64,000 bases of DNA, taken from positions 186,001 through 250,000 of the IMG/VR virus record IMGVR_UViG_3300049793_000366. The stretch is one strand, 5' to 3'. The notes below the pieces were generated by a model. The model made no database searches, was not told the origin of the DNA, and saw only the letters and a list, made by a program, of their open reading frames with translations. Of the stretch, positions 1,899 through 60,861 are shown piece after piece. How positions within the stretch are numbered: the first letter of the stretch is position 1; every line of letters starts with the position of its first letter. A program made the position numbers and the translations under genes.

Positions 1899-2659
1899 TA
1901 CCAAGAGTGTTCCGGATTCTCTTCGAATATAGAATCTAAATAATTCTCAATAACACTACTCATATCTTTTGTTTTATACATTTCAGCAGGACCTTCTGGT
2001 CCTATGTGTACTAAGTAACATGAATCTACATTAATACCGTATTGCTTAAGAATAACTTTATATAAATGTAATTGTATTGAGTATTCGGTTTGATGGTTTT
2101 TGTAGAAGTTATCAAATGGTGTTAGTAAATTTTCAGATTTACCCCAATCTGAATCATCTGTTGTGAATTTCTTATTTGTCTTCCAATCTAAAATAAATAT
2201 CTTATCGTTGTAGATGAATATAGAATCTATCATACCAGCTATTCTCCATTTTCTTGAGAATATTCTTTGTTCAAATATAACTGGTGTTAGTTTGTGTAAC
2301 TTCTGTGCATATAGAATATTGAATTTATTTATTCTCGATGTCACATCTAAATTACTTGGAAGTGGTTGCCAAATTTGGTTGAAATAATTCTCAATCCAGT
2401 TGTGTGTAGCAGTACCTAATTCATTCGCATAATCATTCAGCTTTCTCCATTGTTCTAAGATAAATTCTTGAGGAACACCTTGCTCGTCTGCTTTTACTTT
2501 TGACCAATGGTCTGTTTCGAATGGTTTGTGAAATTTAGAAATAAGCTGAGTTACTGAAATAAATCGCTTACCCTTGTATGTATATTTGTGATATACAGGG
2601 TCGAATTTGAAATCAGGATCGTCAAAAACCTCAAGCTTTTTTATAATGTCATTCTTCAC
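1895..2659 (-). CDS. PD-(D/E)XK (RecB-like) exonuclease
   Basis: GTATHNWIE...EQRIF...AGMIDSI...ILDWKT...QLHLY motifs; no Fe-S cysteine cluster. Confidence 0.85.
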   Translation of the reverse strand: MKNDIIKKLEVFDDPDFKFDPVYHKYTYKGKRFISVTQLISKFHKPFETDHWSKVKADEQGVPQEFILEQWRKLNDYANELGTATHNWIENYFNQIWQPLPSNLDVTSRINKFNILYAQKLHKLTPVIFEQRIFSRKWRIAGMIDSIFIYNDKIFILDWKTNKKFTTDDSDWGKSENLLTPFDNFYKNHQTEYSIQLHLYKVILKQYGINVDSCYLVHIGPEGPAEMYKTKDMSSVIENYLDSIFEENPEHSWY

Positions 2660-2716
2660 TAAAATGATATTATAAAAAAGTCAAAAAGTTTATTTAATCC
2701 GTTGATTTTTAGGTGA

Positions 2717-3049
2717 TTATTTACCTAAAGTGTCAATTTTGGCTGAATCTTTAACGAGTAATGAATCTTTAGGTAGAAAAATAGCTTTGAAGGGCTTTTT
2801 CTCTGGTTGTGGAGGTGGTAAGTAGAGTGTGTCGTGTTTCACCACCTCTTTGGGTGGTAAGTTTGTCATAACAGCTACTATTGAATCCAGTTGCTTTATT
2901 CTTATATCCTTTGCCGCTGATTCATTTGTTTTTCGAAACAAGAAGAAACTAAGTAGTGATATTGTTATTATAATTGCGATGCATACGAATAAAAAAATAC
3001 CTACTGTCCCTTCGTGTCTTCTGTGATAATTCTGGTGGTTGCTTCTCAT
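2717..3049 (-). CDS. Hypothetical membrane-anchored protein
   Basis: N-terminal hydrophobic segment GIFLFVCIAIIITISLLSFFLF followed by a Pro-rich tail. Confidence 0.65.
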   Translation of the reverse strand: MRSNHQNYHRRHEGTVGIFLFVCIAIIITISLLSFFLFRKTNESAAKDIRIKQLDSIVAVMTNLPPKEVVKHDTLYLPPPQPEKKPFKAIFLPKDSLLVKDSAKIDTLGK

Positions 3050-3357
3050 TTTTTGCGTTTATAGTACTTGTTATAGTGAGGGTTCGGGAATAGCTTAAGA
3101 TGTAACCAAATTCTGAATTTAGAAATTTTAGCCATTAACTTAGCCCATGTCCATTTTTCAATCTTATTTGGTGTAGGCTTTTCTTTCTCACCTAAGATGA
3201 AGTCGATTTTACCAACGATTTCTTCGTCTACTGGTATTTCGTCTCCATCTTTTAGAAGATTTCTAAGCCTATCAAATGGTGCAAGTCTTTGGTCGTCTGG
3301 GTTATGCTCATAGTCGTGATATAAACCCTTATACATTTTTTCTGTTTCCTTGTCCAT
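3046..3357 (-). CDS. Hypothetical protein
   Basis: 103 aa ORF directly downstream of a host-type promoter; ATGA overlap with the next gene. Confidence 0.6.
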   Translation of the reverse strand: MDKETEKMYKGLYHDYEHNPDDQRLAPFDRLRNLLKDGDEIPVDEEIVGKIDFILGEKEKPTPNKIEKWTWAKLMAKISKFRIWLHLKLFPNPHYNKYYKRKK

Positions 3358-4593: not shown

Positions 4594-4605
4594 AGTTGCA
4601 ATAAT

Positions 4606-4614
4606 TAATATATA
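4606..4614 (+). promoter_or_regulatory. Putative late promoter TAATATATA
   Basis: Exact motif 5 nt upstream of ATG 4620. Confidence 0.6.
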
Positions 4615-10294: not shown

Positions 10295-11446
10295 TTATAA
10301 AGAAAGAGTGCGTTTAAATACTGAACCTGGTACGACCTTAGTTGGTAATTCCTCGCGAATATGTTCTACCGGAATTTCTTCTAATTCTGGTATGTAATTA
10401 ATCAACTCTGCTCTCGTTCCGATAAATTCGAGAGAACCTTCTTTTGTATTACCCCAGCAAGTATTTCCGTTCCAATCAATGCTGTTATAGTCATTGATGT
10501 TTAACATCTTTTTGATTAGGTCAACTTCCTTAGCAATCCACGTTTTGGAGATATATGCTTTTACATTATCACCATCTTTGTTGATTACTTTTGTGTAATG
10601 CGTTGCTGACCACTCGTTGTAAACGTGTTTGTCTTTATCATAATAACCATAGGTTAAGTATGTATCGAATAGTAAATCATCGTCCTCTTCTTCCTCTATG
10701 AAATTAGGGTCGCGTTTTACAGGTAATGATTCCCAGTCTACTTTTACTGATGCTCTACATAAGTTTTGAAGATGTGTGATATCTTGTGATTCATCATATG
10801 TGTGTTCATCGTAGTAACCAACAGAGATATTGGTACACTCTGGTATCAATTCCATAAACTGTGCTGAGTCAGTAACAACACCAGTATCATCTGGTGAGTA
10901 TTTAAATGTTGACTCCGCATCATTTAATTGTTTACTTAAAGCTTCTGCGAATTCCTCAGAACAACAGCGACTATACATCTGATGTGTGATGATTGATTTT
11001 GTTCCGCGTCTATCGAATGATATTACTCGGTCAAATGGATATGTTTCCCATTTCTTACTTTCCTTTTGATTGAAAAAGTATTTAGCGAGTTTTTTAGATC
11101 CTTGACAACCGACTTCTTCTGCTAAGAAAAAGAAATAACAACCAGGTACTTCTTTCTCTATCATATAGAGCATTACGACCATACCAGCTTTATCGTCAGC
11201 ACCGAGAATAGAATTACCATCCGTGATTACGTGGCCTTCTTCAAATTCGTGGTTTACGTTCTTTTGTGTACAATCGGCTGTGTCGAGGTGACAAGTAAAT
11301 AGTGTTCTTGATTTTCCTACTTGAATATAGTAATTTCCGAAAGCATCAACTTTATAACCTTTTGGTAAATATGATTCGAGTTCTTTCTCGTGACCGCTTG
11401 GGTATGTCTTTCGAGTAAGTTGTAAAAACTTTCTTAATGGGCGCAT
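10295..11446 (-). CDS. M28/M20-clan zinc peptidase with C-terminal extension (start revised to ATG 11446)
   Basis: HLDT, LGADDKAG, AEEVG, SFDR, ECTNISVGYYDEHT zinc-ligand motifs; the listed TTG start lies upstream of a promoter at 11471-11502. Confidence 0.8.
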   Translation of the reverse strand: MRPLRKFLQLTRKTYPSGHEKELESYLPKGYKVDAFGNYYIQVGKSRTLFTCHLDTADCTQKNVNHEFEEGHVITDGNSILGADDKAGMVVMLYMIEKEVPGCYFFFLAEEVGCQGSKKLAKYFFNQKESKKWETYPFDRVISFDRRGTKSIITHQMYSRCCSEEFAEALSKQLNDAESTFKYSPDDTGVVTDSAQFMELIPECTNISVGYYDEHTYDESQDITHLQNLCRASVKVDWESLPVKRDPNFIEEEEDDDLLFDTYLTYGYYDKDKHVYNEWSATHYTKVINKDGDNVKAYISKTWIAKEVDLIKKMLNINDYNSIDWNGNTCWGNTKEGSLEFIGTRAELINYIPELEEIPVEHIREELPTKVVPGSVFKRTLSL

Positions 11447-11470
11447 GGGTGTCAAATTATTTATTTTACC

Positions 11471-11502
11471 CAAATATACGGACATTTTTTCTAATTTGCA
11501 AA
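11471..11502 (-). promoter_or_regulatory. Bacteroidota sigmaA-type promoter (TTTG-N20-TATATTTG)
   Basis: Minus strand TTTG caaattagaaaaaatGTCCg TATATTTG. Confidence 0.75.
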
Positions 11503-12006
11503 TCAATCTTCATCATCGAAGATTTGAGTAATCTTCGTGTCTCTTAGAAATTTACGTTGCCATTCATCCAGAGTTAGTTTTTCCTTGCTTTGCTTGTCTT
11601 CTATGAGCTTTTTCTCGCGTGTCTGACAATGATATACAAATTGATTAAAGTTGCTGTAATCAAGTCCCTGTGCGTTATCACCGACATTTAAAATTATTGG
11701 AATGGGTAATCTTTTCAAAAGATTTAAGTCCTTGTTTGTCAAGGTCTTAGACCTACCCCATATATCATCGATTATGATTAGGTCTACTCTAAAGGTGTGA
11801 TTATCAAGAATATCATCCAAATTATTTTTAATTTGAATCATTTTAATTTTAGCTGGTGATAGCGGGATTGATTTTATGCTATTGTTTGAATAAGTTAGAT
11901 ATAGTATGTTAGCCGCAGAGGCATAAAATGTACACAGGTCAAAAGTTATCGAATTGTCCTTTGGTGTCTTAGAAAAGAAAACATTTATGTGTCCAAGATT
12001 AATCAA
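11503..12006 (-). CDS. Hypothetical protein with C-terminal RD tag
   Basis: 167 aa; ends LRDTKITQIFDDED. Confidence 0.6.
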   Translation of the reverse strand: MINLGHINVFFSKTPKDNSITFDLCTFYASAANILYLTYSNNSIKSIPLSPAKIKMIQIKNNLDDILDNHTFRVDLIIIDDIWGRSKTLTNKDLNLLKRLPIPIILNVGDNAQGLDYSNFNQFVYHCQTREKKLIEDKQSKEKLTLDEWQRKFLRDTKITQIFDDED

Positions 12007-12340
12007 TTATATAGTCTATTTTTAAATCACGTTGATATACTTTTAGTGGTATCTCAATGAATATGTTATTTTCTTTCGTAGCATTTAACTTTAGAAAATC
12101 AATACTAAGATAAGACGAGTAATTATATTCGGTTATTCCGTTTTGGTTTTCAATACAGTTTAAAATCAATAGTGAAGAATCTTCGGGGTTAGTTGATAGA
12201 AACATTATATCACCCTCCATTGCTGTTACACACTCAGACTCGTGATAAGAGCAATCATCTTCATCGACTGTTACTGATATAGGTATATTAAATTCAAAGT
12301 TTGTCTTGAAGATAAATTCTATTTTACTTAAGTTTATCAT
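11999..12340 (-). CDS. Hypothetical protein with C-terminal RD tag
   Basis: 113 aa; ends QRDLKIDYIID. Confidence 0.6.
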   Translation of the reverse strand: MINLSKIEFIFKTNFEFNIPISVTVDEDDCSYHESECVTAMEGDIMFLSTNPEDSSLLILNCIENQNGITEYNYSSYLSIDFLKLNATKENNIFIEIPLKVYQRDLKIDYIID

Positions 12341-12881
12341 TCTTTTTTTGTTTAAAAAGTAAATATCTTGATGTTACATCAACCACGAATTTATTATCAG
12401 CGAGAAACTTTCTACCAATTAGTATAGGACATTTCATATTGCTTCTATTTGATAATGTAGCTTCTATAATGTAACGCTTACTACCCATATCTAAATTGGT
12501 CTTAATGAGATATCGAGTTTCAGATTCACCATTGGATGACTTAACTGTGGTTGTTGCAAAGTCTTTAGTTCTAAATTCTTTATCATTGAGTACATTGAAT
12601 ACTAGTTCATCACCATCTATTCTTATACTATGTGCGTTTATTGATGCTGAGTAAGCACCAGTGTCTATTTTAGCTTTAAGACCTATTATATCAAAGTCGG
12701 GTAACCCAACTTTCTCAGCGCGACCAATAAATTGGTAGTTTATATTCTCTGTTTCTTTCACGATAGATGAAGTATTTTGGTGGTTCAAGTTTCCCAGTTC
12801 GTAAGTTAATTCTAACTCCGAATCCAGTCCATGGTTGCTTCCATCGATAGGGTTGTTGAATAGTGAATTGTTGTTGTTCAT
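12324..12881 (-). CDS. Retropepsin-like aspartic protease of the RimK-associated ('ATP-dependent Zn protease') family; start revised to ATG 12881
   Basis: AKIDTGAYSASI...SSNGESETRY...TLSNRSNMKCPILIGRKFL; the listed start overlaps the -7 promoter element. Confidence 0.8.
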   Translation of the reverse strand: MNNNNSLFNNPIDGSNHGLDSELELTYELGNLNHQNTSSIVKETENINYQFIGRAEKVGLPDFDIIGLKAKIDTGAYSASINAHSIRIDGDELVFNVLNDKEFRTKDFATTTVKSSNGESETRYLIKTNLDMGSKRYIIEATLSNRSNMKCPILIGRKFLADNKFVVDVTSRYLLFKQKKNDKLK

Positions 12882-12923
12882 TCTTTCGTAAAAGTATAGA
12901 CTGCTGTGAGTATGATACTTTAG

Positions 12924-12954
12924 CAAATATAAGAAAAAATAAAATTAAAGTCAA
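12924..12954 (-). promoter_or_regulatory. Bacteroidota sigmaA-type promoter (TTG-N20-TATATTTG)
   Basis: Minus strand gTTG actttaattttattttttct TATATTTG. Confidence 0.7.
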
Positions 12955-13066: not shown

Positions 13067-13834
13067 ATGAATAATATTAATCCATACAAATTTACCTACA
13101 TAATTGCTTATAAAAATAGAGCAGATAGGCTGATGAATCTACGCAGAGTACTGGATTGGGTTTCAGGGTTCGTAGGGATTGAAATTATTATTGTTGAACA
13201 AGATAAAAAACCTCAAATTGAGAATTTGGTTTTTAATAGACCAGTTAAATATCATTTTCTAGAAACAGATTTACCTTTTAATAAAGCATGGGCTTTCAAT
13301 GTTGGTACAAAGTACGCAACTACTGATATAATTGTTTTTGGTGATTCTGATATCATAATGGATCCTAACGATTTCATAAACGCATTGAAAACACTTGAGA
13401 CTCACGATTGTGTTTCTCCTTATAATAGAGTTATTGATTTACAACCAGAAGAATTATCTTTTGATTTAAATGCTATGAATGCTATTACTAGACCAGGTAG
13501 AGGCGAGACTGATATTCAGAAGATTTGTTTATGTGGTGGTATCATCATGTATAAGAGAGATGCATTGAATAAAATCGGTGGTTGGTGTGAAGACTTCATT
13601 GGATGGGGTGGTGAAGATGATGCTCAAAGTTATAAAACTAAAAAGTTACTTAATTGGTCAGAAGCAACCGCTAAATGTTATCACCTATGGCATAGACCAG
13701 AAACACCTATAATGAACTTATATCAGAGAAATTTACAAATTCTGAATCAAATCCAAGCAATGGATGAAAATACTTTGAATAAGTATATTCAGAATTCTAT
13801 CCCAAGAGCGGGACTAAAAAGTAGGTTTGCTTAA
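13067..13834 (+). CDS. GT-A fold glycosyltransferase (GT2/GT7 galactosyltransferase-like)
   Basis: FNKAWAFNVG, DSD (DxD), GWGGEDD, HLWH. Confidence 0.85.
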   Translation: MNNINPYKFTYIIAYKNRADRLMNLRRVLDWVSGFVGIEIIIVEQDKKPQIENLVFNRPVKYHFLETDLPFNKAWAFNVGTKYATTDIIVFGDSDIIMDPNDFINALKTLETHDCVSPYNRVIDLQPEELSFDLNAMNAITRPGRGETDIQKICLCGGIIMYKRDALNKIGGWCEDFIGWGGEDDAQSYKTKKLLNWSEATAKCYHLWHRPETPIMNLYQRNLQILNQIQAMDENTLNKYIQNSIPRAGLKSRFA

Positions 13835-14626
13835 ATGCTTAAATATACACACAGGATAAAAACACCTCTACCGAGTTGTCAGATATCCTATATAGCACAT
13901 CAAACTCATGATAGTGAGGCTAATAGGAATCAAAGAACTCAACTTAAAAGAGGATTGAAGATTGATTGCATTGTTGAGGATAAGGAATACGATGAGTCAG
14001 AATTACCTCCATATTTCGAGAGAGATAATTCATTTAGTTCGATGGGTACTATGAGTATTCAAATGATGCAAAAGAATGTAAGTTTGAATAACTATTCAGC
14101 TACTAATCCTGAAACACATAAATTCGTAACTTGGGTTCAAGAGTTAGAAAGAATAGCACTTGTTAATTCAGCTTATCTTAGTCAGAGTAGACGTAATATG
14201 GATTTGTCGATATCAAGTATAATTAGTGATGATAATAGCACAATTGAAAATATTGATATTCTTTATAAGAAAATTGTAACTAGACTTATGCAGTGTTGTA
14301 ATTACATAGCATCAGAGGGTAGAATAGGTCCGGGTAATGTCGTATTCGTTGGTACAAAAGTAGCTACACACTTATTGAACTCTAATACTTTTTTGAATAG
14401 TATGTCTATGAATACTCTTGGTAAATCAAGAAGGGAACTGGGTAACTGTATGGGTCTTGATTTTGTGGTAACACCTGAGATAGATTCAGATACCTTTTTA
14501 GTTTTTAGGAAAGTTAGTTCTAATATAGAGCCTACGTTGTGTCTTGTTGAACATGAAACAAATGATAATAGATGGGCAATTGTAGATTGTGGACAACATT
14601 ATTGCGTTAGTTTTAAAGTAACCTAA
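13835..14626 (+). CDS. Hypothetical protein; short gp23/gp24 major-capsid-like paralogue
   Basis: IASEGRIGPGNVVFVGTKVATHL resembles gp23 IARQTGRGEGNFIIASRNVVNVL; downstream G-L-D-F-V-V...DTFLVFRK parallels the gp23 P-domain. Confidence 0.5.
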   Translation: MLKYTHRIKTPLPSCQISYIAHQTHDSEANRNQRTQLKRGLKIDCIVEDKEYDESELPPYFERDNSFSSMGTMSIQMMQKNVSLNNYSATNPETHKFVTWVQELERIALVNSAYLSQSRRNMDLSISSIISDDNSTIENIDILYKKIVTRLMQCCNYIASEGRIGPGNVVFVGTKVATHLLNSNTFLNSMSMNTLGKSRRELGNCMGLDFVVTPEIDSDTFLVFRKVSSNIEPTLCLVEHETNDNRWAIVDCGQHYCVSFKVT

Positions 14627-15192
14627 AATGACAATCTTATCTTATTGTGTTTAGCAAATAACTGATAAACGTTTAACCACTCTTTTTCTGGATCTTCAAC
14701 TTGTTTTTCTATCCACTTGTTGTTATTACAAATCTCTACTATCATACCAGGTTTAAGTTCTGACTTATCCGTTATGTTCTTATATTGTCTTTGCTCTTTA
14801 AATGAGAAAGATAACCCTTGAAAGATGTATGATTTATTCTGTAAATCAGAGTCGTACATATTTAAGGATAGTGGTTTTTCGTTACCATCCTTGTATATTC
14901 TTCTTATTATTGGTTCGTCTCTGTATTTGATAATTATATCATCTTGGTCGAACTGTGATAAAAGGTATAAAGCATCTTTCTTAAGCTCTTCGTTACCTAT
15001 CTCTGAATTGTGAGCTAAATATGTGTCTTCCCAATGTCCATTCGCATATCCTCTAAGATGCTGTATTGTGTATTCTTTAGAATATAATATCGATTCAAGC
15101 TTTGAGCTTCTATTTTCATTCTCAATAGTATTCCTGTCTGCTCTGAAAGCAGAAACAATCATATAAGAGCTTCGTATATCCGTAAGATTCAT
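14623..15192 (-). CDS. T3-type SAM lyase (SAMase)-like protein with C-terminal extension
   Basis: YMIVSAFR...ENENR...GY...WE...FDQDDII parallels T3 SAMase YVLVSAFR...NMSR...GCY...EE...WEQDCVL (reference recalled from memory). Confidence 0.65.
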   Translation of the reverse strand: MNLTDIRSSYMIVSAFRADRNTIENENRSSKLESILYSKEYTIQHLRGYANGHWEDTYLAHNSEIGNEELKKDALYLLSQFDQDDIIIKYRDEPIIRRIYKDGNEKPLSLNMYDSDLQNKSYIFQGLSFSFKEQRQYKNITDKSELKPGMIVEICNNNKWIEKQVEDPEKEWLNVYQLFAKHNKIRLSF

Positions 15193-15197
15193 TCTCC

Positions 15198-15206
15198 TAT
15201 ATATTA
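15198..15206 (-). promoter_or_regulatory. Putative late promoter TAATATATA
   Basis: Minus strand TAATATATA-GGAGA-ATG at 15192. Confidence 0.55.
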
Positions 15207-15247
15207 AATAAGTCAGAACAAAAACAAACTTAATAAATATAACACTT

Positions 15248-15748
15248 ATGGCAATAATGGCACCTCAACAACTTAATAACTTTGGTACGTACCATCATAC
15301 ATTATTTGACGTGGATAAGAATATCCCAGTACCTTGCTTGGTTGAAATGGAAATCAATAGTCAAGCTCAATACGGTGCTGTTGGTGTAAATAACCATCGT
15401 CCGGCTATACGCAGAGATGAATTGACTTTAACGGTGACTATCAATGCTGACATTGTACCAGATGCTACTTGGGCTATGGAATGGATAACAGATACATTTA
15501 ATGGTGCTGGATCTATGTTTAGTAATAAATATAAACGTTCACTGTTTGTAGCAAACGATAATTCTTATAACTCTGGTTTGTCTATATATGGTGCTTATGT
15601 CAAAACATATAGCAATGTCTGTGACTTCAATAACACAATTAAGCTTGAAATAGGATGCGACCATTTCACTGATAGTTTACCAATGGATGGATATTTCAAG
15701 TCAATTAGACGGGATGCTCAATTAAATCAATTATTTGATAATTTATAG
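15248..15748 (+). CDS. Hypothetical protein; tail-tube (gp19)-like fold with C-terminal RD tag
   Basis: W..W...G...KYKR.L.V...IYGAY...I.L.I.CDHF pattern typical of T4-like tube proteins; ends RRDAQLNQLFDNL. Confidence 0.45.
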   Translation: MAIMAPQQLNNFGTYHHTLFDVDKNIPVPCLVEMEINSQAQYGAVGVNNHRPAIRRDELTLTVTINADIVPDATWAMEWITDTFNGAGSMFSNKYKRSLFVANDNSYNSGLSIYGAYVKTYSNVCDFNNTIKLEIGCDHFTDSLPMDGYFKSIRRDAQLNQLFDNL

Positions 15749-16347: not shown

Positions 16348-18213
16348 TTACTTCACTTCTTCTGAATCTATATCAGTTACTTGCTGACCATCATCAGTTG
16401 GTGGTGTTTGTTCTTGATACATTCGTGTAGAAACATCATTCCAAACAGTGTTTAGACTTGCTAAATGAATATCAATTGCATCGATGTCTTTATTAGAATG
16501 AGCAGTTTTCAATTCAGCTAACGCAGTTTCTAATTTACTCTTATCATCTGCTGATAGTTTTTCACCAAATTCTTTAATTTGTTTTTCTGTTTGAAATATC
16601 ATACCATCTGCTTGATTTACTTTATCAATCTTTTCTTTTTCTAAACGGTCTGATTCAGCATTCGCTTCTGCTTCTTGTTTCATTCTCTCAATCTCTTCTT
16701 TTGAGAGTTGTGAGTTTCCTTCAATTCTTATTTTGTTTTCTTTGTTTGTAGCTTTGTCTTTTGCTGATACAGCGATGATACCATTTGCATCAATGTCAAA
16801 TGTAACTTCTACTTGTGGTACACCTCTTGGTGATGGTGGAATACCATCTAAGTGAAATCTACCAAGTGTTCTGTTATCTTTTGCTAACGGTCTCTCACCT
16901 TGTATAACATGAATCTCAACAGATGGTTGATTATCCGAAGCTGTTGAGAACGTTTCTGATTTCTTAGTTGGGATTGTTGTGTTAGCTTCAATTAATTTAG
17001 TCATAACACCACCCATTGTTTCAATGCCTAATGATAATGGTGTAACGTCTAATAGAAGAACGTCTGTAATGTCACCACTTAGTACTGAACCTTGAATAGC
17101 GGCACCAATGGCAACAACTTCATCTGGATTCACACCTTTGTTTGGTTTCTTGTTGAAGAATTTTTCAACAGCTTCTTGTATAGCAGGTATTCTTGTAGAA
17201 CCACCTACTAATATAATTTCATCAATATCGGATGGTTTTAAACCAGCATTTTTAAGTGCAGATTTACATGGTTCGATTGTTCTCTTTATTAGAGAGTCGG
17301 ATAGTTGTTCAAATTTAGAACGAGTTAATGATAGAACAAGATGTTTTGGTGTACCATCTACTGATGTGATGTATGGTAAATTAATATCAGTTTGTGATGT
17401 TGATGATAATTCGACCTTTGCTTTTTCAGCCGCCTCTTTCAATCTTTGTAATGCCATTGAATCCTGTTTCAAGTCGAAACCATTTTCTTTTTTGAATTCA
17501 TCTGCCATCCAATCAATGATAGCATTATCGAAATCGTCACCACCTAAGTGAGTATCACCATCGGTTGATTTTACTTCAAATACACCATCACCTAATTCTA
17601 AAACAGAAACGTCATGTGTACCACCACCGCAGTCGAACACAACTATTTTCATTTCCTTATCTGTCCTATTTAATCCGAATGCTAAAGCCGCGGCTGTTGG
17701 TTCGTTGATAATTCTTTCTACTTTTAATCCTGCAATTTCTCCGGCTTCGATTGTAGCTTTTCTTTCAGCATCACCGAAGTATGCTGGTACTGTTATAACA
17801 GCTCTTTTTATTTCTTGTCCTAAATAATCTTCTGCTGTCTTCTTCATTTTTTGAAGAATCATTGCTGATATTTCTTGTGATGTATAATTTCTATCACCTA
17901 TTTTTACAACTGGTACTGTTCCTGTTTTTTCTACAACGTAAGGAACACGCTTTATTTCACTCTTAATAGAATCAAAACTTCTACCAATGAATCTTTTGAT
18001 TGAGTATATTGTTTGTTCTGGATTAACAACTGCTTGACGTTTAGCTGTGTCGCCAATTTTTCTTTCGCCGTCTTTAGAGAATCCAACAATAGAAGGTGTT
18101 GTTCTTTTACCTTCTGAATTTGAGATAACAACTGGTTCACCGCCTTCAACAACGGCAACACATGAATTCGTTGTACCTAAGTCAATACCAATAATGTAGT
18201 CTTTTTTGCTCAT
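16348..18213 (-). CDS. dnaK: Molecular chaperone DnaK (Hsp70)
   Basis: [55 protein letters not shown], full substrate-binding domain. Confidence 0.98.
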
Positions 18214-18405: not shown

Positions 18406-19509
18406 ATGGTTATTCATAAATCAGGTGCTAAGTTTTCTTCAATCGTCACAATAGGCGAAAAATTAAAAAAATTAAGCACTGAATCAGGGCTAGAATATCT
18501 CTACTTAAATAGAGGTGTCAATGCCGTTTGTAATATCAATCTGAAATCTATAATTTCTAAAATTGATTTTAATTCTGCAAGAATTCAAACTTATCCACCA
18601 AATGCTGGATTCCCAGAACTACGCGAAGCGATAAACAAAGATTATTTCAACGGTGAGAGTAAAGCAGAAAATATCTATGTTGCTCCAGGTGGTATGTCTT
18701 GTTTGGATCTTATTCTAAAGACGTTAGACTTAAATACTTTATTTATTTCTAATTACTATTGGGGTTCTTATAAAGAATTAGCAACCGCACATAAATTAAA
18801 AGTATTAACATACGAAGGATTAACGGAGTTAGCTCCTGACAAGACTGGTAAGTATGAGAAGACTGCAATTGTTATTTGTGAGCCTAATAACCCAACTGGT
18901 GATAAACACAACGATGATTACTTATTTCACAATGTAGAAGCATTGTCTGACATGGGTATGACTGTTATTATCGATTGTCCTTATAGAAAGTTATTCTTTA
19001 GTGATTCTGAGTTCTACACTAAATTAATGGCTAATAAAAATGTTATTATAACTGAGAGTTTCAGTAAGTGTATGGGTTTATCCGGCCAGAGAATTGGATT
19101 TGTTCATTCTACAAATGAAGAGTTCAATAACGAGTTGAATATAAACATATTATATTCTACAAATGGTACGAATGCGTTTGCTCAAGAATTGGTATTAAAT
19201 CTATTAACGACAGAAGAAGGAAAAGCAGAAGTAACTAAGTTCAGAGAAAAAACTGCTGGTGACATTGCTAAGAATATTTCTTGGTTAAAAACTAATAACT
19301 TATTGTATGATAAGTTGTATGAGAATGATCCAATTGGTATCTTTGTCATAGTGAACAAGTCAACAGAGGAATTATTGAAGTGTAGAATTGGTAGTGTACC
19401 ATTAAGCGACTTCTGTAAAATGAGTGAGTGTCCGGATTATGCACGTATTTGTGTATCTGTACCACACGAAAAATTTGTATCATTTTTTAAGAATGTTATT
19501 AATATATAA
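18406..19509 (+). CDS. PLP-dependent aminotransferase class I/II
   Basis: YPPNAGFPELREAI, EPNNPTG, DCPY, SFSK (PLP lysine)...SGQRIG. Confidence 0.9.
   Translation: MVIHKSGAKFSSIVTIGEKLKKLSTESGLEYLYLNRGVNAVCNINLKSIISKIDFNSARIQTYPPNAGFPELREAINKDYFNGESKAENIYVAPGGMSCLDLILKTLDLNTLFISNYYWGSYKELATAHKLKVLTYEGLTELAPDKTGKYEKTAIVICEPNNPTGDKHNDDYLFHNVEALSDMGMTVIIDCPYRKLFFSDSEFYTKLMANKNVIITESFSKCMGLSGQRIGFVHSTNEEFNNELNINILYSTNGTNAFAQELVLNLLTTEEGKAEVTKFREKTAGDIAKNISWLKTNNLLYDKLYENDPIGIFVIVNKSTEELLKCRIGSVPLSDFCKMSECPDYARICVSVPHEKFVSFFKNVINI
19500..19508 (+). promoter_or_regulatory. Putative late promoter TAATATATA upstream of rpsU
   Basis: Exact motif 4 nt before ATG 19513. Confidence 0.55.
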
Positions 19510-28741: not shown

Positions 28742-28750
28742 ATATTTATT

Positions 28751-29050
28751 TTAGTTATTGATTTTCTTTTTTAAGTCTACGAGTTCTAAGATTTTTATAC
28801 GATTTAACTTATTTAGCTTTTTCTCTAAAATGTTTACTTCGGTTATATCTAAAATTCTTTCTTGAGCAGCTTCAATCCACATATTCATGTATCTCGCTTT
28901 AGTACCTTCGCGCTCAGATAATCCGGCTATAACGCTTTTATATTTTTCCACACGAGAAGAAAGTTCAGCAATGATTTGTTCATTGGTGAACTTGGTGAAG
29001 TCTACCTTTAATTTGGTGTCCACCATTGATTTTATCCTATCAATTGTCAT
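28751..29050 (-). CDS. Hypothetical protein (start revised to ATG 29050)
   Basis: The listed start 29101 lies inside the promoter; MTIDRIK... is in the same frame. Confidence 0.55.
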   Translation of the reverse strand: MTIDRIKSMVDTKLKVDFTKFTNEQIIAELSSRVEKYKSVIAGLSEREGTKARYMNMWIEAAQERILDITEVNILEKKLNKLNRIKILELVDLKKKINN

Positions 29051-29072
29051 TAAGAGTCCGGTATAATTTGTA

Positions 29073-29103
29073 CAAATATAATAAAAAATGGACAAAAGCA
29101 CAA
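29073..29103 (-). promoter_or_regulatory. Bacteroidota sigmaA-type promoter (TTG-N20-TATATTTG)
   Basis: Minus strand gTTG tgcttttGTCCattttttat TATATTTG; heads the 29050-24411 gene run. Confidence 0.7.
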
Positions 29104-29150
29104 CTAAAGAACATTTATTTTTATAAATATCTTAAATATAATGAATTAAT

Positions 29151-35544: not shown

Positions 35545-35577
35545 TATTTGTCCAAAATCATATAGGAGTTCAGTTTT

Positions 35578-35586
35578 TAATATATA
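35578..35586 (+). promoter_or_regulatory. Putative late promoter TAATATATA
   Basis: Exact motif upstream of ATG 35609. Confidence 0.6.
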
Positions 35587-48341: not shown

Positions 48342-48755
48342 ATGAACACGGAATCAGAAGTTAATTACTTTTTCGCTCTGAAACTTTCTAAAATTTTTGA
48401 AAGAGAAGACGAGTTTAAAATGCTCAAGTGCTTATATTATAGCTACAAGGACAAAATTATAGAATCTGACTTTTTCAACAAAAAGGTTGATGAAATGAAG
48501 ATTTCTATTATCAAAACAGGAAATCAAGAAGTAGGTACGATTATGCATAGCTTGTTTAAGAATTATAGTAAACAAGACGCTACTAATATACTTATCTTAC
48601 TTTCTGTGATAGAGAACGCAGTTAATCACGAGAACTACGAGGTAGCAAACAAAGCAAAGCAAGAAATTCTTAACGTTAAAGGTTTAACCGAAGCTGAGTA
48701 TTTCAAGATGTTCAAATGTTTTGTTACTGATTGCCCTGTGAAATACGACTTCTAA
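48342..48755 (+). CDS. Hypothetical protein with UVR-like C-terminal hairpin
   Basis: AVNHENYEVANKAKQEI; ATG at 48342. Confidence 0.55.
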   Translation: MNTESEVNYFFALKLSKIFEREDEFKMLKCLYYSYKDKIIESDFFNKKVDEMKISIIKTGNQEVGTIMHSLFKNYSKQDATNILILLSVIENAVNHENYEVANKAKQEILNVKGLTEAEYFKMFKCFVTDCPVKYDF

Positions 48756-49587
48756 AATTCGTATTCTCTAATACAAATTTAGCATGGGTATTAACATCAA
48801 GTCTAACGCCAAAGTCGCGGTAGATTTGGTCTATAATAAACTTCACTGCAAATTCTTCTTCGAAGATTACCTTCCAGCCTGATGGGACTTTCTTTTTGAA
48901 TGTTTCAATAGTTATTGGGAGGTAATTTTCATTCACCTCTCTGCTCCAATTTTCAATATATCTATACTTAAGTAAGTAGTGAATAAGTGTTTTGTTATTA
49001 CTGTCAATCTTACCCCATCTTCTTTCGAATGATTCTAATGTTTCCGGATCTGATTTTCTCTTAACCTTTTCAATCTCGGATTCGAAATTCTGACTTTTAT
49101 ATGAGTTCACACTCGGCATCATATCTCTGACAGCTACATACTTAAAGTTATTACCGAATACTTGTGATTCCCAGAACTTCTTAACTATTTTTGAGTGAGA
49201 GTATGAATATACTTCGTGAATAACTGATGATAATAAAAGTAATGGAGCATTGTATTTTTTAAGCTCAGTTAATACTTCTGTCCAGTTAGTAGTTAATAAT
49301 ACATCACCGCTAACACGCTCCTTTGCTTTATTAAGCATATTTTGGTCTAAATCATAGCCAATTATAGCTATATCTGGGTTAGCCTCTCTAATCTTCTGTA
49401 AAATGAACCCATTCGCACATCCAAAATCAACAATAACATCAGCTTGTGCTTTATCTAAAAAGAACAACTTATCTATGTAGGACATAGCCATACCCTTGTT
49501 ATAAACATCGTAATCAGCAATTGGTTTCTCACCAACAAGCTCTTCGTTAATAAAACTTAGGAAATTATAGATTTTTTTCTTAGACAT
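48724..49587 (-). CDS. Class I SAM-dependent methyltransferase with capsid-targeting-like N-terminus
   Basis: VDFGCANG (motif I), GYDLD..ML, LSSVIHEVYSY; starts MSKKKIYNFLSFINEE. Confidence 0.8.
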   Translation of the reverse strand: MSKKKIYNFLSFINEELVGEKPIADYDVYNKGMAMSYIDKLFFLDKAQADVIVDFGCANGFILQKIREANPDIAIIGYDLDQNMLNKAKERVSGDVLLTTNWTEVLTELKKYNAPLLLLSSVIHEVYSYSHSKIVKKFWESQVFGNNFKYVAVRDMMPSVNSYKSQNFESEIEKVKRKSDPETLESFERRWGKIDSNNKTLIHYLLKYRYIENWSREVNENYLPITIETFKKKVPSGWKVIFEEEFAVKFIIDQIYRDFGVRLDVNTHAKFVLENTNFRSRISQGNQ

Positions 49588-49591
49588 AACA

Positions 49592-49600
49592 TATATATTA
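49592..49600 (-). promoter_or_regulatory. Putative late promoter TAATATATA
   Basis: Exact motif 4 nt upstream of ATG 49587. Confidence 0.6.
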
Positions 49601-49632
49601 AAGTCTAGCGTTTATTTTTTATATATAGACTT

Positions 49633-56986: not shown

Positions 56987-56997
56987 CAACACTCAAT

Positions 56998-57006
56998 TAA
57001 TATATA
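56998..57006 (+). promoter_or_regulatory. Putative late promoter TAATATATA
   Basis: Exact motif 4 nt upstream of ATG 57011. Confidence 0.6.
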
Positions 57007-60803: not shown

Positions 60804-60812
60804 TATATATTA
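60804..60812 (-). promoter_or_regulatory. Putative late promoter TAATATATA
   Basis: Exact motif upstream of ATG 60798. Confidence 0.6.
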
Positions 60813-60861
60813 AAAAGTGTGTTTAAAAATTTTATATATACTATACAAAAATATAAACACT

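What the first reader, a model, noticed from the sequence alone, without database searches (positions are those of the whole stretch)
14623..15192. T3-like SAM lyase candidate behind a late-type promoter
Seen: YMIVSAFR...ENENR...LRGY...WED...SQFDQDDIII plus a ~60 aa C-terminal extension. Established: T3 SAMase (VSAFR...N..R...GCY...EE...EQD, recalled from memory) cleaves SAM and counters SAM-dependent restriction-modification and BREX. T3 expresses it very early. Here TAATATATA-GGAGA directly precedes the ATG, which suggests late expression. The same window also encodes a leader-tagged SAM-dependent methyltransferase, so SAM use and SAM destruction must be separated in time or space.
Basis: partly seen in the sequence, partly recalled or inferred. 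Interest (0 to 1): 0.65.

Follow-up and report, generated by a model that had tools for sequence, protein, structure and literature searches.

The report
Megaphage SAM lyase with late-type promoter
A very large uncultured phage, probably of Bacteroidota, carries a distant relative of the phage T3 enzyme that destroys S-adenosylmethionine, with an extra tail domain and a promoter it shares with the phage's head and packaging genes; this is a new variant of a known counter-defence enzyme, not a new kind of system.

Summary
The ORF is real: window 14623-15192, minus strand, 189 aa. It is a diverged member of the phage SAM lyase family.

- **Family and fold.** Pfam PF23780 gives E=1e-5, just under the curated cut-off, and 11 of 15 relatives also match. 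The AlphaFold model (pLDDT 90.5) matches T3 SAM lyase far above all other folds (Z 13.7, 130 residues). Svi3-3 comes second (Z 8.0).
- **Active site.** Profile alignment places G48, E55, Q83 and D84 on the T3/Svi3-3 substrate-binding residues. The Tyr position is Ala50.
- **Extra domain.** Residues ~136-189 form a well-predicted domain with no recognisable fold. It is conserved in all 41 relatives.
- **Promoter.** TTTAATATATA is a genome-wide promoter-like motif. It sits 4-6 nt before the start codon of 57 genes and also precedes the capsid, portal, protease, terminase and sheath-like genes. It lies 4-7 nt upstream of the lyase start in 35 of 36 related loci. GGAGA is a variable spacer, not a ribosome-binding site.
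- **Timing.** Late timing is inferred, not shown.
A class I methyltransferase in the window and a phage DNA methyltransferase carry the same promoter, so promoter class gives no sign that SAM use and SAM destruction are separated in time.
- **Untested.** Activity and substrate (SAM or SAM-AMP) were not tested.

The parts
14623..15192 (-). CDS of the 189-aa SAM lyase homologue (P0001), stop codon included. The true start is the ATG at 15190-15192, not the internal Met11 used in the public 179-aa gene call.
   Evidence: The N-terminus MNLTD...S9 is conserved in 41 relatives. The promoter motif lies 5 nt upstream of this ATG. The public gene call P0002 is 179 aa.
14788..15192 (-). T3-type SAM lyase domain, aa 1-135. 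Nine strands and two helices in the same order as the T3 SAMase barrel.
   Evidence: PF23780 matches aa 11-105. AF2 model pLDDT is 90.5. 7ock_L gives Z 13.7 with model residues 2..135 on chain residues 4..153. 8bb1_E gives E=1.7e-5. T3 SAMase is described as a nine-stranded barrel with two helices.
15166..15192 (-). N-terminal tail, aa 1-9 (MNLTDIRSS). L3 and S9 are invariant and N2 nearly so across the family.
   Evidence: In T3 the equally conserved N-terminal tail is the MetK-binding element. A comparable role here is inference only.
15010..15069 (-). Beta2-beta3 hairpin (aa 42-61), the counterpart of the T-loop region. It carries G48 (15049-15051), Y49, A50, H53 and E55-D56 (15025-15030), and is 6 residues shorter than in T3.
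   Evidence: hhalign of A1 against A2 pairs G48 with T3 G55 and E55 with T3 E68 (= Svi3-3 E69). T3 Y57 falls on A50.
14941..14946 (-). Q83-D84, the counterpart of T3 Q94-D95 and Svi3-3 Q104-E105.
   Evidence: hhalign. Q83 is kept in 34 of 41 family members and D/E84 in 40 of 41.
14626..14787 (-). C-terminal extension, aa 136-189. It is a small beta-hairpin, helix and strand domain absent from T3 SAMase and Svi3-3. It holds invariant G149 M150 V152 E153 W160 E171 L178 K184 R186.
   Evidence: Modelled alone it gives pLDDT 89.7. No PDB match exceeds Z 3.5; several weak Tudor/SH3-like rows appear. Pfam gives only a sub-threshold DUF5348 hint. No standalone homologue was found by word search. It is present in all relatives.
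15198..15208 (-). P1 promoter-like element TTTAATATATA. It resembles a -10-only phage promoter and ends 5 nt before the ATG.
   Evidence: It is conserved 4-7 nt upstream of the start in 8 of 8 fetched orthologous loci and 27 of 28 IMG/VR loci. The same motif precedes the capsid, terminase, sheath-like, portal and protease genes.
15193..15197 (-). Spacer GGAGA between the promoter element and the ATG. It is not a conserved Shine-Dalgarno sequence.
   Evidence: Orthologues have CAAT, CCACT, GTTATT, GTATATA, CTTA, AACTT and others at this place. It lies 1 nt from the ATG. Bacteroidetes mRNAs naturally lack SD sequences (PMC6847099 abstract).
15217..15225 (-). GTTTTTGTT, conserved upstream in the closer orthologues. 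On the plus strand it reads AACAAAAAC, an A-rich stretch like the leader of the capsid gene, so it may belong to the divergent gene at 15248.
   Evidence: Its function was not tested.
13835..14626 (+). Conserved convergent neighbour, 263 aa, function unknown. It has a weak local match to T4 Gp23, and its end overlaps the lyase gene end by 4 nt.
   Evidence: The same arrangement is found in L003, L004, L008, L010 and L011.
13067..13834 (+). GT2-family glycosyltransferase. It travels with the lyase gene even in the most distant loci.
   Evidence: Pfam Glycos_transf_2 and Glyco_transf_7C. Synteny.
15248..15748 (+). Divergent upstream gene, 166 aa, no family match. It shares the 55-nt intergenic region with the lyase gene.
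   Evidence: A divergent small gene is present in L003, L004 and L008.
48724..49602 (-). Class I SAM-dependent methyltransferase (P0062, CDS 48724-49587) with its own P1 element (TTAATATATA at 49592-49601) and a 4-nt spacer.
   Evidence: Methyltransf_12 scores 32.6 bits (cut-off 30) and Methyltransf_31 scores 29.2 (cut-off 27). Promoter.

Best explanation
The gene encodes a diverged, T3-type S-adenosylmethionine lyase of a very large phage. The IMG/VR record is 508 kb and comes from a 712-kb contig. The host is probably a member of the Bacteroidota.

The first ~135 residues fold into the nine-stranded barrel with two helices seen in T3 SAMase. They keep the residues that hold SAM in its reactive conformation: G48, E55, Q83 and D84. 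The enzyme would therefore cleave SAM into methylthioadenosine and homoserine lactone. That would starve SAM-dependent host defences such as type I restriction-modification and BREX.

A ~54-residue C-terminal domain of unknown fold is fused to the barrel and is conserved throughout this subfamily. The N-terminal tail is conserved in the same way. Both probably serve binding or assembly rather than chemistry.

The gene is transcribed from a phage-specific, -10-only type promoter (TTTAATATATA). The promoter ends 5 nt before the ATG, so the mRNA would be leaderless or nearly so. Because the head and packaging genes use the same promoter class, expression is most likely middle-to-late rather than immediate-early as in T3.

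Shown here: homology, fold, residue correspondence, promoter class, and conservation of promoter and synteny. Inferred: enzymatic activity, substrate, timing and biological role.
For: **Family.**
- PF23780 gives E=1e-5, and 11 of 15 relatives match, best 1.2e-8.
- PHROG 2226 also matches; its label 'SAM-dependent methyltransferase' is the same annotation that the T3 record carries on its SAMase gene 0.3.
- ESM Atlas neighbours are PF23780 clusters.
- BFVD hits after the orthologue are Autographiviridae SAM hydrolases.

**Fold.**
- The model has pLDDT 90.5.
- T3 SAM lyase gives Z 13.7, rmsd 2.8 over 130 residues. Svi3-3 gives Z 8.0 and the next fold 7.2.
- Foldseek gives 8bb1_E E=1.7e-5 and 7ock_K 1.7e-4.

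**Residues.**
- hhalign of this family against the T3-like family (E=0.0026) pairs YMIVSAFR with YVLVSAFR, N25..R28 with N27..R30, G48 with G55, E55 with E68, and Q83-D84 with Q94-D95.
- E68/Q94 in T3 and E69/Q104/E105/G56 in Svi3-3 are the substrate-binding residues.
- In 41 family sequences, Q83 is kept in 34, D/E84 in 40, an acidic residue at 55 in 35, and a small residue at 48 in 36.

**Promoter.**
- Enrichment is 24-fold. 57 genes have 4-6 nt spacing.
- P1 heads the capsid, terminase, sheath-like, portal and head-protease genes.
- P1 heads 36 of 55 transcription units in the structural block against 84 of 295 elsewhere, Fisher p=3e-7.
- A separate TTTG-N~18-TCCGTATATTTG class precedes metabolic and small ORFs.
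- The phage encodes a sigma-70-like factor and no RNA polymerase beta subunit.
- P1 lies directly upstream of the lyase start in 35 of 36 related loci.

**Host.** The closest public huge phages, LR756502 and LR745206, are among those predicted to infect Bacteroidetes.
Against: - The Pfam score is below the curated cut-off for this protein (25.9 against 28). Identity to T3 is only 12-18%.
- The Tyr that stacks on the sulfonium (Svi3-3 Y58, T3 Y57) aligns with Ala50. Most relatives have Tyr there (27 of 41), and only the window's subclade of 4 has Ala, together with His53.
- The beta2-beta3 hairpin is 6 residues shorter than in T3.
- The residues that never vary in the family (K89, Y90, G103, E105, Y122, F131, Y137 and the C-terminal domain) are not the known catalytic set.
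- Some distant members have lost G48, E55 or Q83.
- The phage encodes six DNA methyltransferases over Pfam cut-offs. At least one of them, and a class I methyltransferase, share the P1 promoter. That sits badly with bulk SAM depletion at the same time.
- P1 also precedes a DNA helicase, so it is not strictly a late class.
- No RNA data exist for this phage.
Confidence: 0.6

Rival explanations
1. The enzyme is a lyase for a SAM derivative rather than for SAM itself, most plausibly SAM-AMP. SAM-AMP is the second messenger of CorA-associated type III CRISPR systems, which were first described in Bacteroides fragilis. The protein would then act as an anti-CRISPR that leaves the SAM pool available for the phage's own methyltransferases.
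For: - SAM-AMP lyases share the fold and the Glu/Gln pair with SAM lyases, and a phage-encoded one cleaves SAM-AMP but not SAM.
- The probable host phylum matches that of the first described system.
- The phage has six DNA methyltransferases and a class I methyltransferase. Some share the lyase's promoter class, so sparing SAM would make sense.
- The T-loop-equivalent hairpin differs in length from T3, and the Tyr position is Ala.
Against: - The fold match to the C. botulinum SAM-AMP lyase is weak (9gab_D Z 5.3), against 13.7 for T3 SAM lyase.
- The known SAM-AMP lyases are PII-like trimers with an extended T-loop that builds the AMP site. Here the hairpin is shorter, not longer.
- No type III CRISPR link was found or sought for these phages.
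Confidence: 0.15
2. The conserved role of this subfamily is not catalysis but binding. The barrel, the invariant N-terminal tail and the C-terminal domain would dock onto a host protein (MetK by analogy with T3) or a phage protein. Lyase activity would be weak, accessory or lost.
For: - Catalytically dead T3 SAMase keeps part of its anti-BREX effect through MetK binding. [quoted passage not shown] - G48, E55 and Q83 vary in some members.
- The phage has no MetK of its own.
Against: - The window protein and most relatives keep the SAM-binding residues: Q83 in 34 of 41, D/E84 in 40 of 41, an acidic residue at 55 in 35 of 41.
- There is no positive evidence for any partner.
Confidence: 0.15
3. 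The similarity is a generic ferredoxin-like/PII-like fold resemblance, and the protein has nothing to do with SAM.
For: - Pfam is below its gathering threshold.
- hhalign probability is low (11%).
- Many ferredoxin-like folds score Z 5-7.
Against: - T3 SAM lyase stands alone at Z 13.7 and covers 130 of 152 residues, including the extra strands beyond the ferredoxin core.
- Three independent methods converge on the same family.
- The aligned motifs coincide with the functional residues.
Confidence: 0.04

Closest known systems
Phage T3 SAM lyase (gp0.3, SAMase; PDB 7OCK, 8BB1)
   Same: - It is the best structural match: Z 13.7, nine-stranded barrel plus two helices.
- The motifs are shared: VSAFR strand, N..R, G, E(E/D) and (E/D)QD.
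- It has a conserved N-terminal tail.
- It is a phage-encoded small protein.
   Different: - Identity is 12-18%.
- The beta2-beta3 hairpin is 6 residues shorter.
- Tyr57 is replaced by Ala50, with His53 nearby.
- There is an added 54-aa C-terminal domain.
- The T3 MetK-contact residues (T4, N9, Q103, T104, H105) are not present as such.
- T3 makes it as the first early protein from host promoters. Here the promoter is the class used by head and packaging genes.
- T3's 38-kb genome stays unmethylated, whereas this phage has at least six DNA methyltransferases.
Svi3-3 SAM lyase (PDB 6ZM9, 6ZNB)
   Same: It shares the ferredoxin-like core (Z 8.0 over 94 residues). It also shares the substrate-binding Gly, Glu and Gln-Glu/Asp positions.
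   Different: - Svi3-3 is a PII-like trimer with active sites between subunits.
- The model here closes into a T3-type barrel within one chain.
- Tyr58 has no counterpart at the aligned position.
- Svi3-3 has no C-terminal domain.
SAM-AMP lyases (C. botulinum CorA-associated enzyme, PDB 9GAB; phage candidate AcrIIIB4)
   Same: They belong to the same superfamily and have the same Glu/Gln pair. The phage version is fused to an extra domain of unknown function.
   Different: - The structural match is weak (Z 5.3).
- Those enzymes are trimers with an extended T-loop for AMP.
- The extra domain of AcrIIIB4 is N-terminal, whereas here it is C-terminal.
- Substrate preference was not tested here.
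SAM-lyase-like domains inside large polyvalent or structural phage proteins (BFVD hits)
   Same: Foldseek finds the same fold in several large phage proteins:
- an ART-PolyVal-like domain-containing protein (1477 aa);
- proteins with a 'large polyvalent protein associated domain';
- a 1231-aa Flavobacterium phage protein annotated 'structural protein'.

That structural annotation is a possible precedent for a lyase that reaches the virion.
   Different: Here the domain is a free-standing 189-aa protein. No evidence of packaging was obtained.

Membership tests
Phage SAM lyase family (Pfam PF23780, S-AdoMet_lyase) | Sequence match to the family profile at or above the curated threshold | tested here: inconclusive
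   The window protein scores 25.9 bits, E=1e-5, against a cut-off of 28. The genome search gives 26.6 bits. Eleven of 15 relatives match at E<=1, best 1.2e-8, and six relatives carry a precomputed PF23780 assignment.
Phage SAM lyase family (T3 type) | Fold: ferredoxin-like core extended to a nine-stranded barrel with two outer helices | tested here: met
   AF2 model pLDDT is 90.5 with the same order of elements. 7ock_L gives Z 13.7, rmsd 2.8 over 130 residues. 8bb1_E gives E=1.7e-5. The T3 fold is described.
Phage SAM lyase family | Substrate-binding Gly, Glu and Gln-(Glu/Asp): Svi3-3 G56, E69, Q104, E105; T3 G55, E68, Q94, D95 | tested here: met
   G48, E55, Q83 and D84 fall at the aligned positions. 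The evidence is alignment-based only; no superposition of coordinates was possible.
Phage SAM lyase family | Tyr of the G-x-Y motif that stacks on the sulfonium (Svi3-3 Y58, T3 Y57) | tested here: not met
   The aligned residue is Ala50, with Tyr49 one position earlier. Tyr50 is present in 27 of 41 relatives, and Ala only in the window's subclade, together with His53. Svi3-3 Y58F lost only fivefold activity, so this does not exclude activity.
Phage SAM lyase family | Catalysis: SAM to 5'-methylthioadenosine plus homoserine lactone | not testable with these tools
   This needs purified protein and HPLC/MS.
T3 SAMase (gp0.3) functional type | [quoted passage not shown] | tested here: inconclusive
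   The T3 contact residues are not conserved as such. This family has its own invariant tail (L3, S9) and K89-Y90. The complex prediction returned no verdict. The host is unknown.
T3 SAMase (gp0.3) functional type | Immediate-early expression from host-type promoters | tested here: not met
   The gene carries the P1 element used by head and packaging genes, not the host-like TTTG/TAnnTTTG class. This is a promoter-class inference; there are no RNA data.
SAM-AMP lyase (CorA-associated type III CRISPR; AcrIIIB4) | PII-like trimer with an extended T-loop and AMP-binding residues (W64, C66, T112 in the C. botulinum enzyme) | tested here: inconclusive
   9gab_D gives only Z 5.3. The hairpin here is shorter than in T3. 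No residue-level comparison with 9GAB was possible, and the oligomeric state was not tested.

The most novel reading that the evidence does not exclude
The lyase is made late on purpose. Like the capsid, portal and protease genes it is driven by the P1 promoter, and it would be packed into the huge capsid and injected with the DNA at the next infection. It could then destroy SAM (or SAM-AMP) before any phage gene is expressed, while the progeny DNA has already been methylated by the phage's six methyltransferases. The conserved N-terminal tail or the C-terminal domain would be the packaging or docking signal. This would reconcile a SAM destroyer with a methyltransferase-rich genome, and it would be a new delivery mode for this counter-defence enzyme.
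Probability: 0.12. Interest if true: 0.75.

Novelty: new variant of a known kind. Interest (0 to 1): 0.45.

Why it matters
SAM lyases are a known phage answer to type I restriction-modification and BREX. The characterised ones are small immediate-early proteins of T7-like phages or environmental clones.

This finding extends the T3-type enzyme to the largest known phages, the Mahaphage-like megaphages of probable Bacteroidota hosts. The form is different in three ways:
- it has an added conserved domain;
- its regulatory class is the one shared with virion genes;
- its genome is full of SAM-dependent DNA methyltransferases.

That combination poses a concrete, testable question: how does one phage both use and destroy SAM? 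The candidate answers are timing, delivery by the virion, or a different substrate such as SAM-AMP.

The work also gives these uncultured phages a first promoter map. One class looks like host sigma-A promoters. The other is a phage-specific TTAATATATA class placed 4-6 nt from start codons. This map corrects gene starts and can guide annotation.

Tried and rejected
- **PDB by sequence.** Searches with the single protein and with the family profile found no SAM lyase. Only fold comparison did.
- **Other family libraries.** NCBIfam and PADLOC returned nothing.
- **Exact 14-mer.** TAATATATAGGAGA is not recurrent. Only the 8-10-mer core is.
- **C-terminal domain.**
  - Pfam gave only a sub-threshold DUF5348 hint.
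  - Fold search of the domain alone gave nothing above Z 3.5.
  - The ESM Atlas feature search gave no usable hit.
  - The word search for standalone homologues came back blank. That search only sees proteins of 31-98 aa, so it says nothing about fusions.
- **Complex prediction.** Prediction with Flavobacterium johnsoniae MetK returned no verdict. It is evidence neither for nor against binding. The host, and therefore the right MetK, is unknown.
- **Sequencing runs.** Only the probable source DNA run (labelled soil metagenome) holds the stretch, and no RNA run does. Read laying was therefore not used, and transcript ends could not be mapped.
- **Annotation of P1-headed window genes.** PHROG and Pfam gave no match for 8 of 10 large P1-headed window genes. 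One had only a sub-threshold Pfam pentapeptide-repeat hit, and one is a DNA helicase.
- **Big representative-protein search.** The protein was not left open by the other searches, and no claim here rests on absence of relatives.
- **Coordinate superposition.** Residue equivalences therefore rest on profile alignment.
Full report
**1. What is at the coordinates**

Window 14623-15192 holds a 189-aa ORF on the minus strand (P0001). The string TAATATATAGGAGA lies directly before the ATG at 15193-15206.

The window is 32-34% G+C throughout. It is part of a 507,910-bp IMG/VR virus record (window = 186001-250000). The public protein copy sits on a 711,805-bp contig. The genome has a T4-like major capsid gene, a large terminase and a sheath-like gene.

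Its nearest public relatives for this protein are the uncultured huge phages LR756502 (642 kb) and LR745206 (635 kb). These belong to the group of genomes over 634 kb that Al-Shayeb et al. predicted to replicate in Bacteroidetes (PMC7162821).

**2. Is it a SAM lyase homologue?**

Sequence evidence:
- Pfam gives PF23780 (S-AdoMet_lyase) at E=1e-5, 25.9 bits, for residues 11-105. This is just below the 28-bit cut-off.
- PHROG 2226 also matches at 4.4e-5. Its label 'SAM-dependent methyltransferase' is the same annotation that the T3 record carries on its SAMase gene 0.3.
- Fifteen relatives were found by word search, and all are 150-192 aa. Eleven of the 15 aligned members hit PF23780, best 1.2e-8.
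- Direct sequence searches of the PDB found nothing.

Structure evidence:
- An AlphaFold2 model built on the 15-sequence alignment is confident: pLDDT 90.5, pTM 0.74.
- Foldseek's two best PDB hits are the T3 SAM lyase chains 8bb1_E (E=1.7e-5) and 7ock_K.
- An exhaustive alignment against 48,161 representative chains puts T3 SAM lyase 7ock_L alone at the top: Z 13.7, rmsd 2.8, 130 aligned residues, model 2-135 on chain 4-153.
- The environmental SAM lyase Svi3-3 is second (6zm9, Z 8.0). Generic ferredoxin-like folds follow at Z 7.2 or less.
- Predicted-structure libraries agree. ESM Atlas neighbours are PF23780 clusters. In BFVD the hits after a 42%-identical marine-phage orthologue are SAM hydrolases of T7-like phages.

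The order of secondary-structure elements (nine strands, two helices) matches the published description of T3 SAMase as a monomeric nine-stranded barrel with two outer helices (bioRxiv 10.1101/2023.02.27.530186). The fold to expect is the T3 barrel, not necessarily the Svi3-3 trimer.

**3. Functional residues**

I fetched T3 gene 0.3 and collected 45 T3-like proteins. I then compared the two family alignments profile against profile (E=0.0026, 87 columns).

The pairing is:

| This protein | T3 | Svi3-3 |
|---|---|---|
| YMIVSAFR | YVLVSAFR | |
| N25..R28 | N27..R30 | |
| G48 | G55 | |
| E55 | E68 | E69 |
| Q83-D84 | Q94-D95 | Q104-E105 |

These are the residues shown to bind SAM in its reactive conformation:
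- Svi3-3 E69Q lost activity 4500-fold.
- G56, E69 and Q104 are the three strictly conserved residues (PMC7877911).
- The T3 E68Q/Q94A double mutant is inactive.

One feature is not met. The Tyr of the G-x-Y motif (Svi3-3 Y58, T3 Y57) aligns with Ala50, and Tyr49 sits one position earlier. The beta2-beta3 hairpin is also 6 residues shorter than in T3. Svi3-3 Y58F lost only fivefold activity, so this does not exclude catalysis.

I enlarged the family to 41 distinct sequences: the 15 word-search relatives, the two huge phages, and 28 IMG/VR loci. Conservation of the key positions is:

| Position | Conservation |
|---|---|
| Q83 | 34 of 41 |
| D/E84 | 40 of 41 |
| Acidic residue at 55 | 35 of 41 |
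| Small residue at 48 | 36 of 41 |
| Tyr50 | 27 of 41 |

Ala50 occurs only in the window's own subclade of four, always together with His53. A few distant members have lost G48, E55 or Q83 (for example LR756502 and P0013-P0016).

The positions that never vary are different ones: L3, S9, L36, L70, K89, Y90, G103, E105, Y122, F129, F131, Y137, and, in the C-terminal part, G149, M150, V152, E153, W160, E171, L178, K184 and R186. The family therefore has a strongly constrained feature beyond the known catalytic set.

**4. The C-terminal extension and the N-terminal tail**

T3 SAMase ends where model residue ~135 lies. Residues 136-189 form an extra unit of hairpin, helix and strand. It is confidently predicted both in context and alone (pLDDT 89.7). 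No solved structure matches it above Z 3.5, and the list contains several Tudor/SH3-like domains at noise level. Pfam gives only a sub-threshold DUF5348 hint. No standalone homologue was found. Every relative has this unit.

The N-terminal tail (MNLTD...S) is equally conserved. In T3 the conserved tail and the beta4-beta5 loop bind host MetK, and that binding contributes to anti-BREX activity even without catalysis. Here the tail and K89-Y90, at the start of the same loop, are invariant but have different residues. A family-specific partner interface is a reasonable inference, no more. A complex prediction with a Flavobacterium MetK gave no verdict. The phage encodes no MetK N-domain of its own.

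**5. The promoter**

A k-mer comparison of upstream regions with the whole genome shows that AATATATA is 24-fold enriched upstream of ORFs. Of 166 genomic copies, 120 lie within 100 nt upstream of an ORF start in the right orientation. About 11 are expected by chance (binomial p ~1e-101).

The consensus is T-T-A-A-T-A-T-A-T-A with no upstream -35-like signal. The distance from the motif's end to the first ATG peaks sharply at 4-6 nt (57 genes). A second group lies at 17-40 nt.

The lyase gene belongs to the first group, with a 5-nt spacer (GGAGA). Three points argue against GGAGA being a ribosome-binding site:
- With the motif that close, the transcript must start at or just before the ATG.
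- GGAG 1 nt from the ATG is too near to act as a Shine-Dalgarno sequence (established knowledge).
- Bacteroidetes mRNAs lack such sequences anyway (PMC6847099 abstract).

The comparative evidence is decisive for the element itself. TTAATATATA (or a one-base variant) sits 4-7 nt upstream of the start in all 8 orthologous loci fetched by protein identity or BLAST. The spacer differs in each: CAAT, CCACT, GTTATT, GTATATA, CTTA, AACTT. The same holds in 27 of 28 further IMG/VR loci, some with GTG starts. This also fixes the true start at Met1. The public 179-aa gene call from Met11 is probably too short.

**6. Is the promoter 'late'?**

A second promoter-like class exists: TTTG(G)-N~18-TCCGTATATTTG. 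This is the Bacteroidota sigma-A pattern, with a -33 TTTG and a -7 TAnnTTTG (the consensus is recalled from established knowledge). It is concentrated before small ORFs at 460-507 kb.

Sampled genes behind each class:

| Class | Genes behind it |
|---|---|
| Host-like class | tRNA nucleotidyltransferase, NAMPT-like, RNA ligase, tRNA-synthetase-like, peptidases |
| P1 | major capsid, large terminase and sheath-like genes; portal protein and head maturation protease |

P1 heads 36 of 55 transcription-unit heads in the 20-112 kb structural block. It heads 84 of 295 elsewhere and 4 of 53 in the small-ORF region (Fisher p=3e-7 and 1.5e-10).

The phage encodes a sigma-70-like protein and a weak region-2-only candidate in the structural block, but no RNA polymerase beta subunit. 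This fits a T4-like scheme in which a phage sigma redirects host polymerase to a -10-only late promoter (analogy, not shown).

Two points count against a strict 'late' label. A DNA helicase in the window also has P1. No RNA data exist: only the probable source DNA run holds this sequence. I therefore rate middle-to-late expression as likely (about 0.6), not established.

**7. SAM use against SAM destruction**

On reading its first 50 residues I saw no signal-like leader.

The genome encodes six DNA methyltransferases over Pfam cut-offs: two N6_N4 and four D12-class. It has no C5 enzyme.

The class I methyltransferase and the N6_N4 enzyme at genome position 2533 both carry P1 with a 4-nt spacer. 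Promoter class therefore does not separate SAM users from the SAM destroyer. This is the most interesting tension in the locus. It can be resolved in several ways:
- the lyase is delivered by the virion and acts at the next infection (the novel case);
- the substrate is SAM-AMP rather than SAM (rival 1; PMC12255297);
- the protein acts mainly by binding (rival 2);
- control is post-transcriptional.

BFVD shows the same fold embedded in large polyvalent-type proteins and in a Flavobacterium phage protein annotated as structural. That is a possible precedent for a virion-associated lyase, but nothing here shows packaging.

**8. Context**

The lyase gene is convergent with a ~250-268-aa gene of unknown function and a GT2 glycosyltransferase. 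This holds in every locus long enough to see it, including LR756502, LR745206 and a seawater contig where only the glycosyltransferase is kept. No functional link is evident. Other neighbours are a DnaK homologue, an aminotransferase, a RimK-associated-type protease domain and an M28 peptidase.

**9. Verdict**

This is a diverged T3-type SAM lyase family member behind a promoter of the class used by virion genes.

- Known: the enzyme family and its counter-defence role.
- New: the megaphage subfamily with a conserved C-terminal domain and invariant non-catalytic residues; the conserved near-leaderless P1 arrangement; and coexistence with many phage methyltransferases under the same promoter class.
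- Untested: activity, substrate, partner and timing.

I rate it a new variant of a known kind, of moderate interest.

Noticed in passing
Whole genome (G000); in the window e.g. 4605-4614, 35577-35586, 56997-57006, 49592-49601, 60804-60813: Phage-specific promoter-like motif TTAATATATA. There are 166 AATATATA copies in the genome, and 57 genes have the motif end 4-6 nt before the first ATG. This implies widespread leaderless or near-leaderless mRNAs in this megaphage and its relatives. Some orthologous lyase genes have GTG starts in this arrangement.
   Followed up: yes
Genome 460-507 kb and scattered sites (e.g. genome 185564, just upstream of the window; 197481 = window 11481, minus strand): A second, long conserved promoter-like element, TTTGG-N~18-TCCGTATATTTG, resembles the Bacteroidota sigma-A -33/-7 pattern. 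It is clustered before many small ORFs, like an early region. This supports a Bacteroidota host.
   Followed up: partly
Genome 112758-113378 (+) and 89597-89962 (+), outside the window: A sigma-70-like ORF (Sigma70_r2, 63 bits) and a 121-aa ORF with a weak region-2-only match inside the structural block. No RNA polymerase beta subunit was found. These are candidate readers of the TTAATATATA promoters.
   Followed up: partly
Genome 2533-3252, 287304-288047, 129642-130481, 289579-290316, 58250-59197, 28746-29396 (outside the window): Six DNA N6/N4-adenine/cytosine methyltransferase genes over Pfam cut-offs in one phage genome. At least one has the same promoter class as the SAM lyase.
   Followed up: partly
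Window 16348-18213 (-), 18406-19509 (+): A full-length DnaK/HSP70 homologue (621 aa) and a class I/II aminotransferase are encoded next to the locus. The pair is conserved in related megaphage contigs, one of which also has a ribosomal protein S21 gene beside it (L003).
   Followed up: no
Window 10295-11506 (-), 12324-12926 (-); genome 97610-98959, 361838-362968: Several paralogous peptidase genes (phrog_4191 / M28-like) and a RimK-associated-type zinc protease domain (PF05618). The peptidase paralogues sit behind different promoter classes.
   Followed up: no
Window 14623-15192, versus the public protein P0002: The public gene call for this ORF starts at Met11 (179 aa). Conservation of residues 1-10 and the promoter position indicate Met1 (189 aa). 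Gene callers that expect ribosome-binding sites may misplace many starts in these genomes.
   Followed up: yes
Window 15193-15247 (intergenic region, 55 nt): The reverse complement of the P1 element (TATATATTAAA) followed by AACAAAAACAAAC faces the divergent gene at 15248. Similar arrangements occur upstream of two DNA methyltransferase genes (genome 28746 and 58250). The element may work in both directions, or the A-rich stretch may be a leader like that of the capsid gene.
   Followed up: no
Record level: IMG/VR classes the 507,910-bp record as a 'provirus', while the same protein is on record on a 711,805-bp contig. A close relative lies on a 709,085-bp contig inside an NCBI genome assembly (GCA_040384045.1). 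The true genome size and ends were not examined.
   Followed up: no
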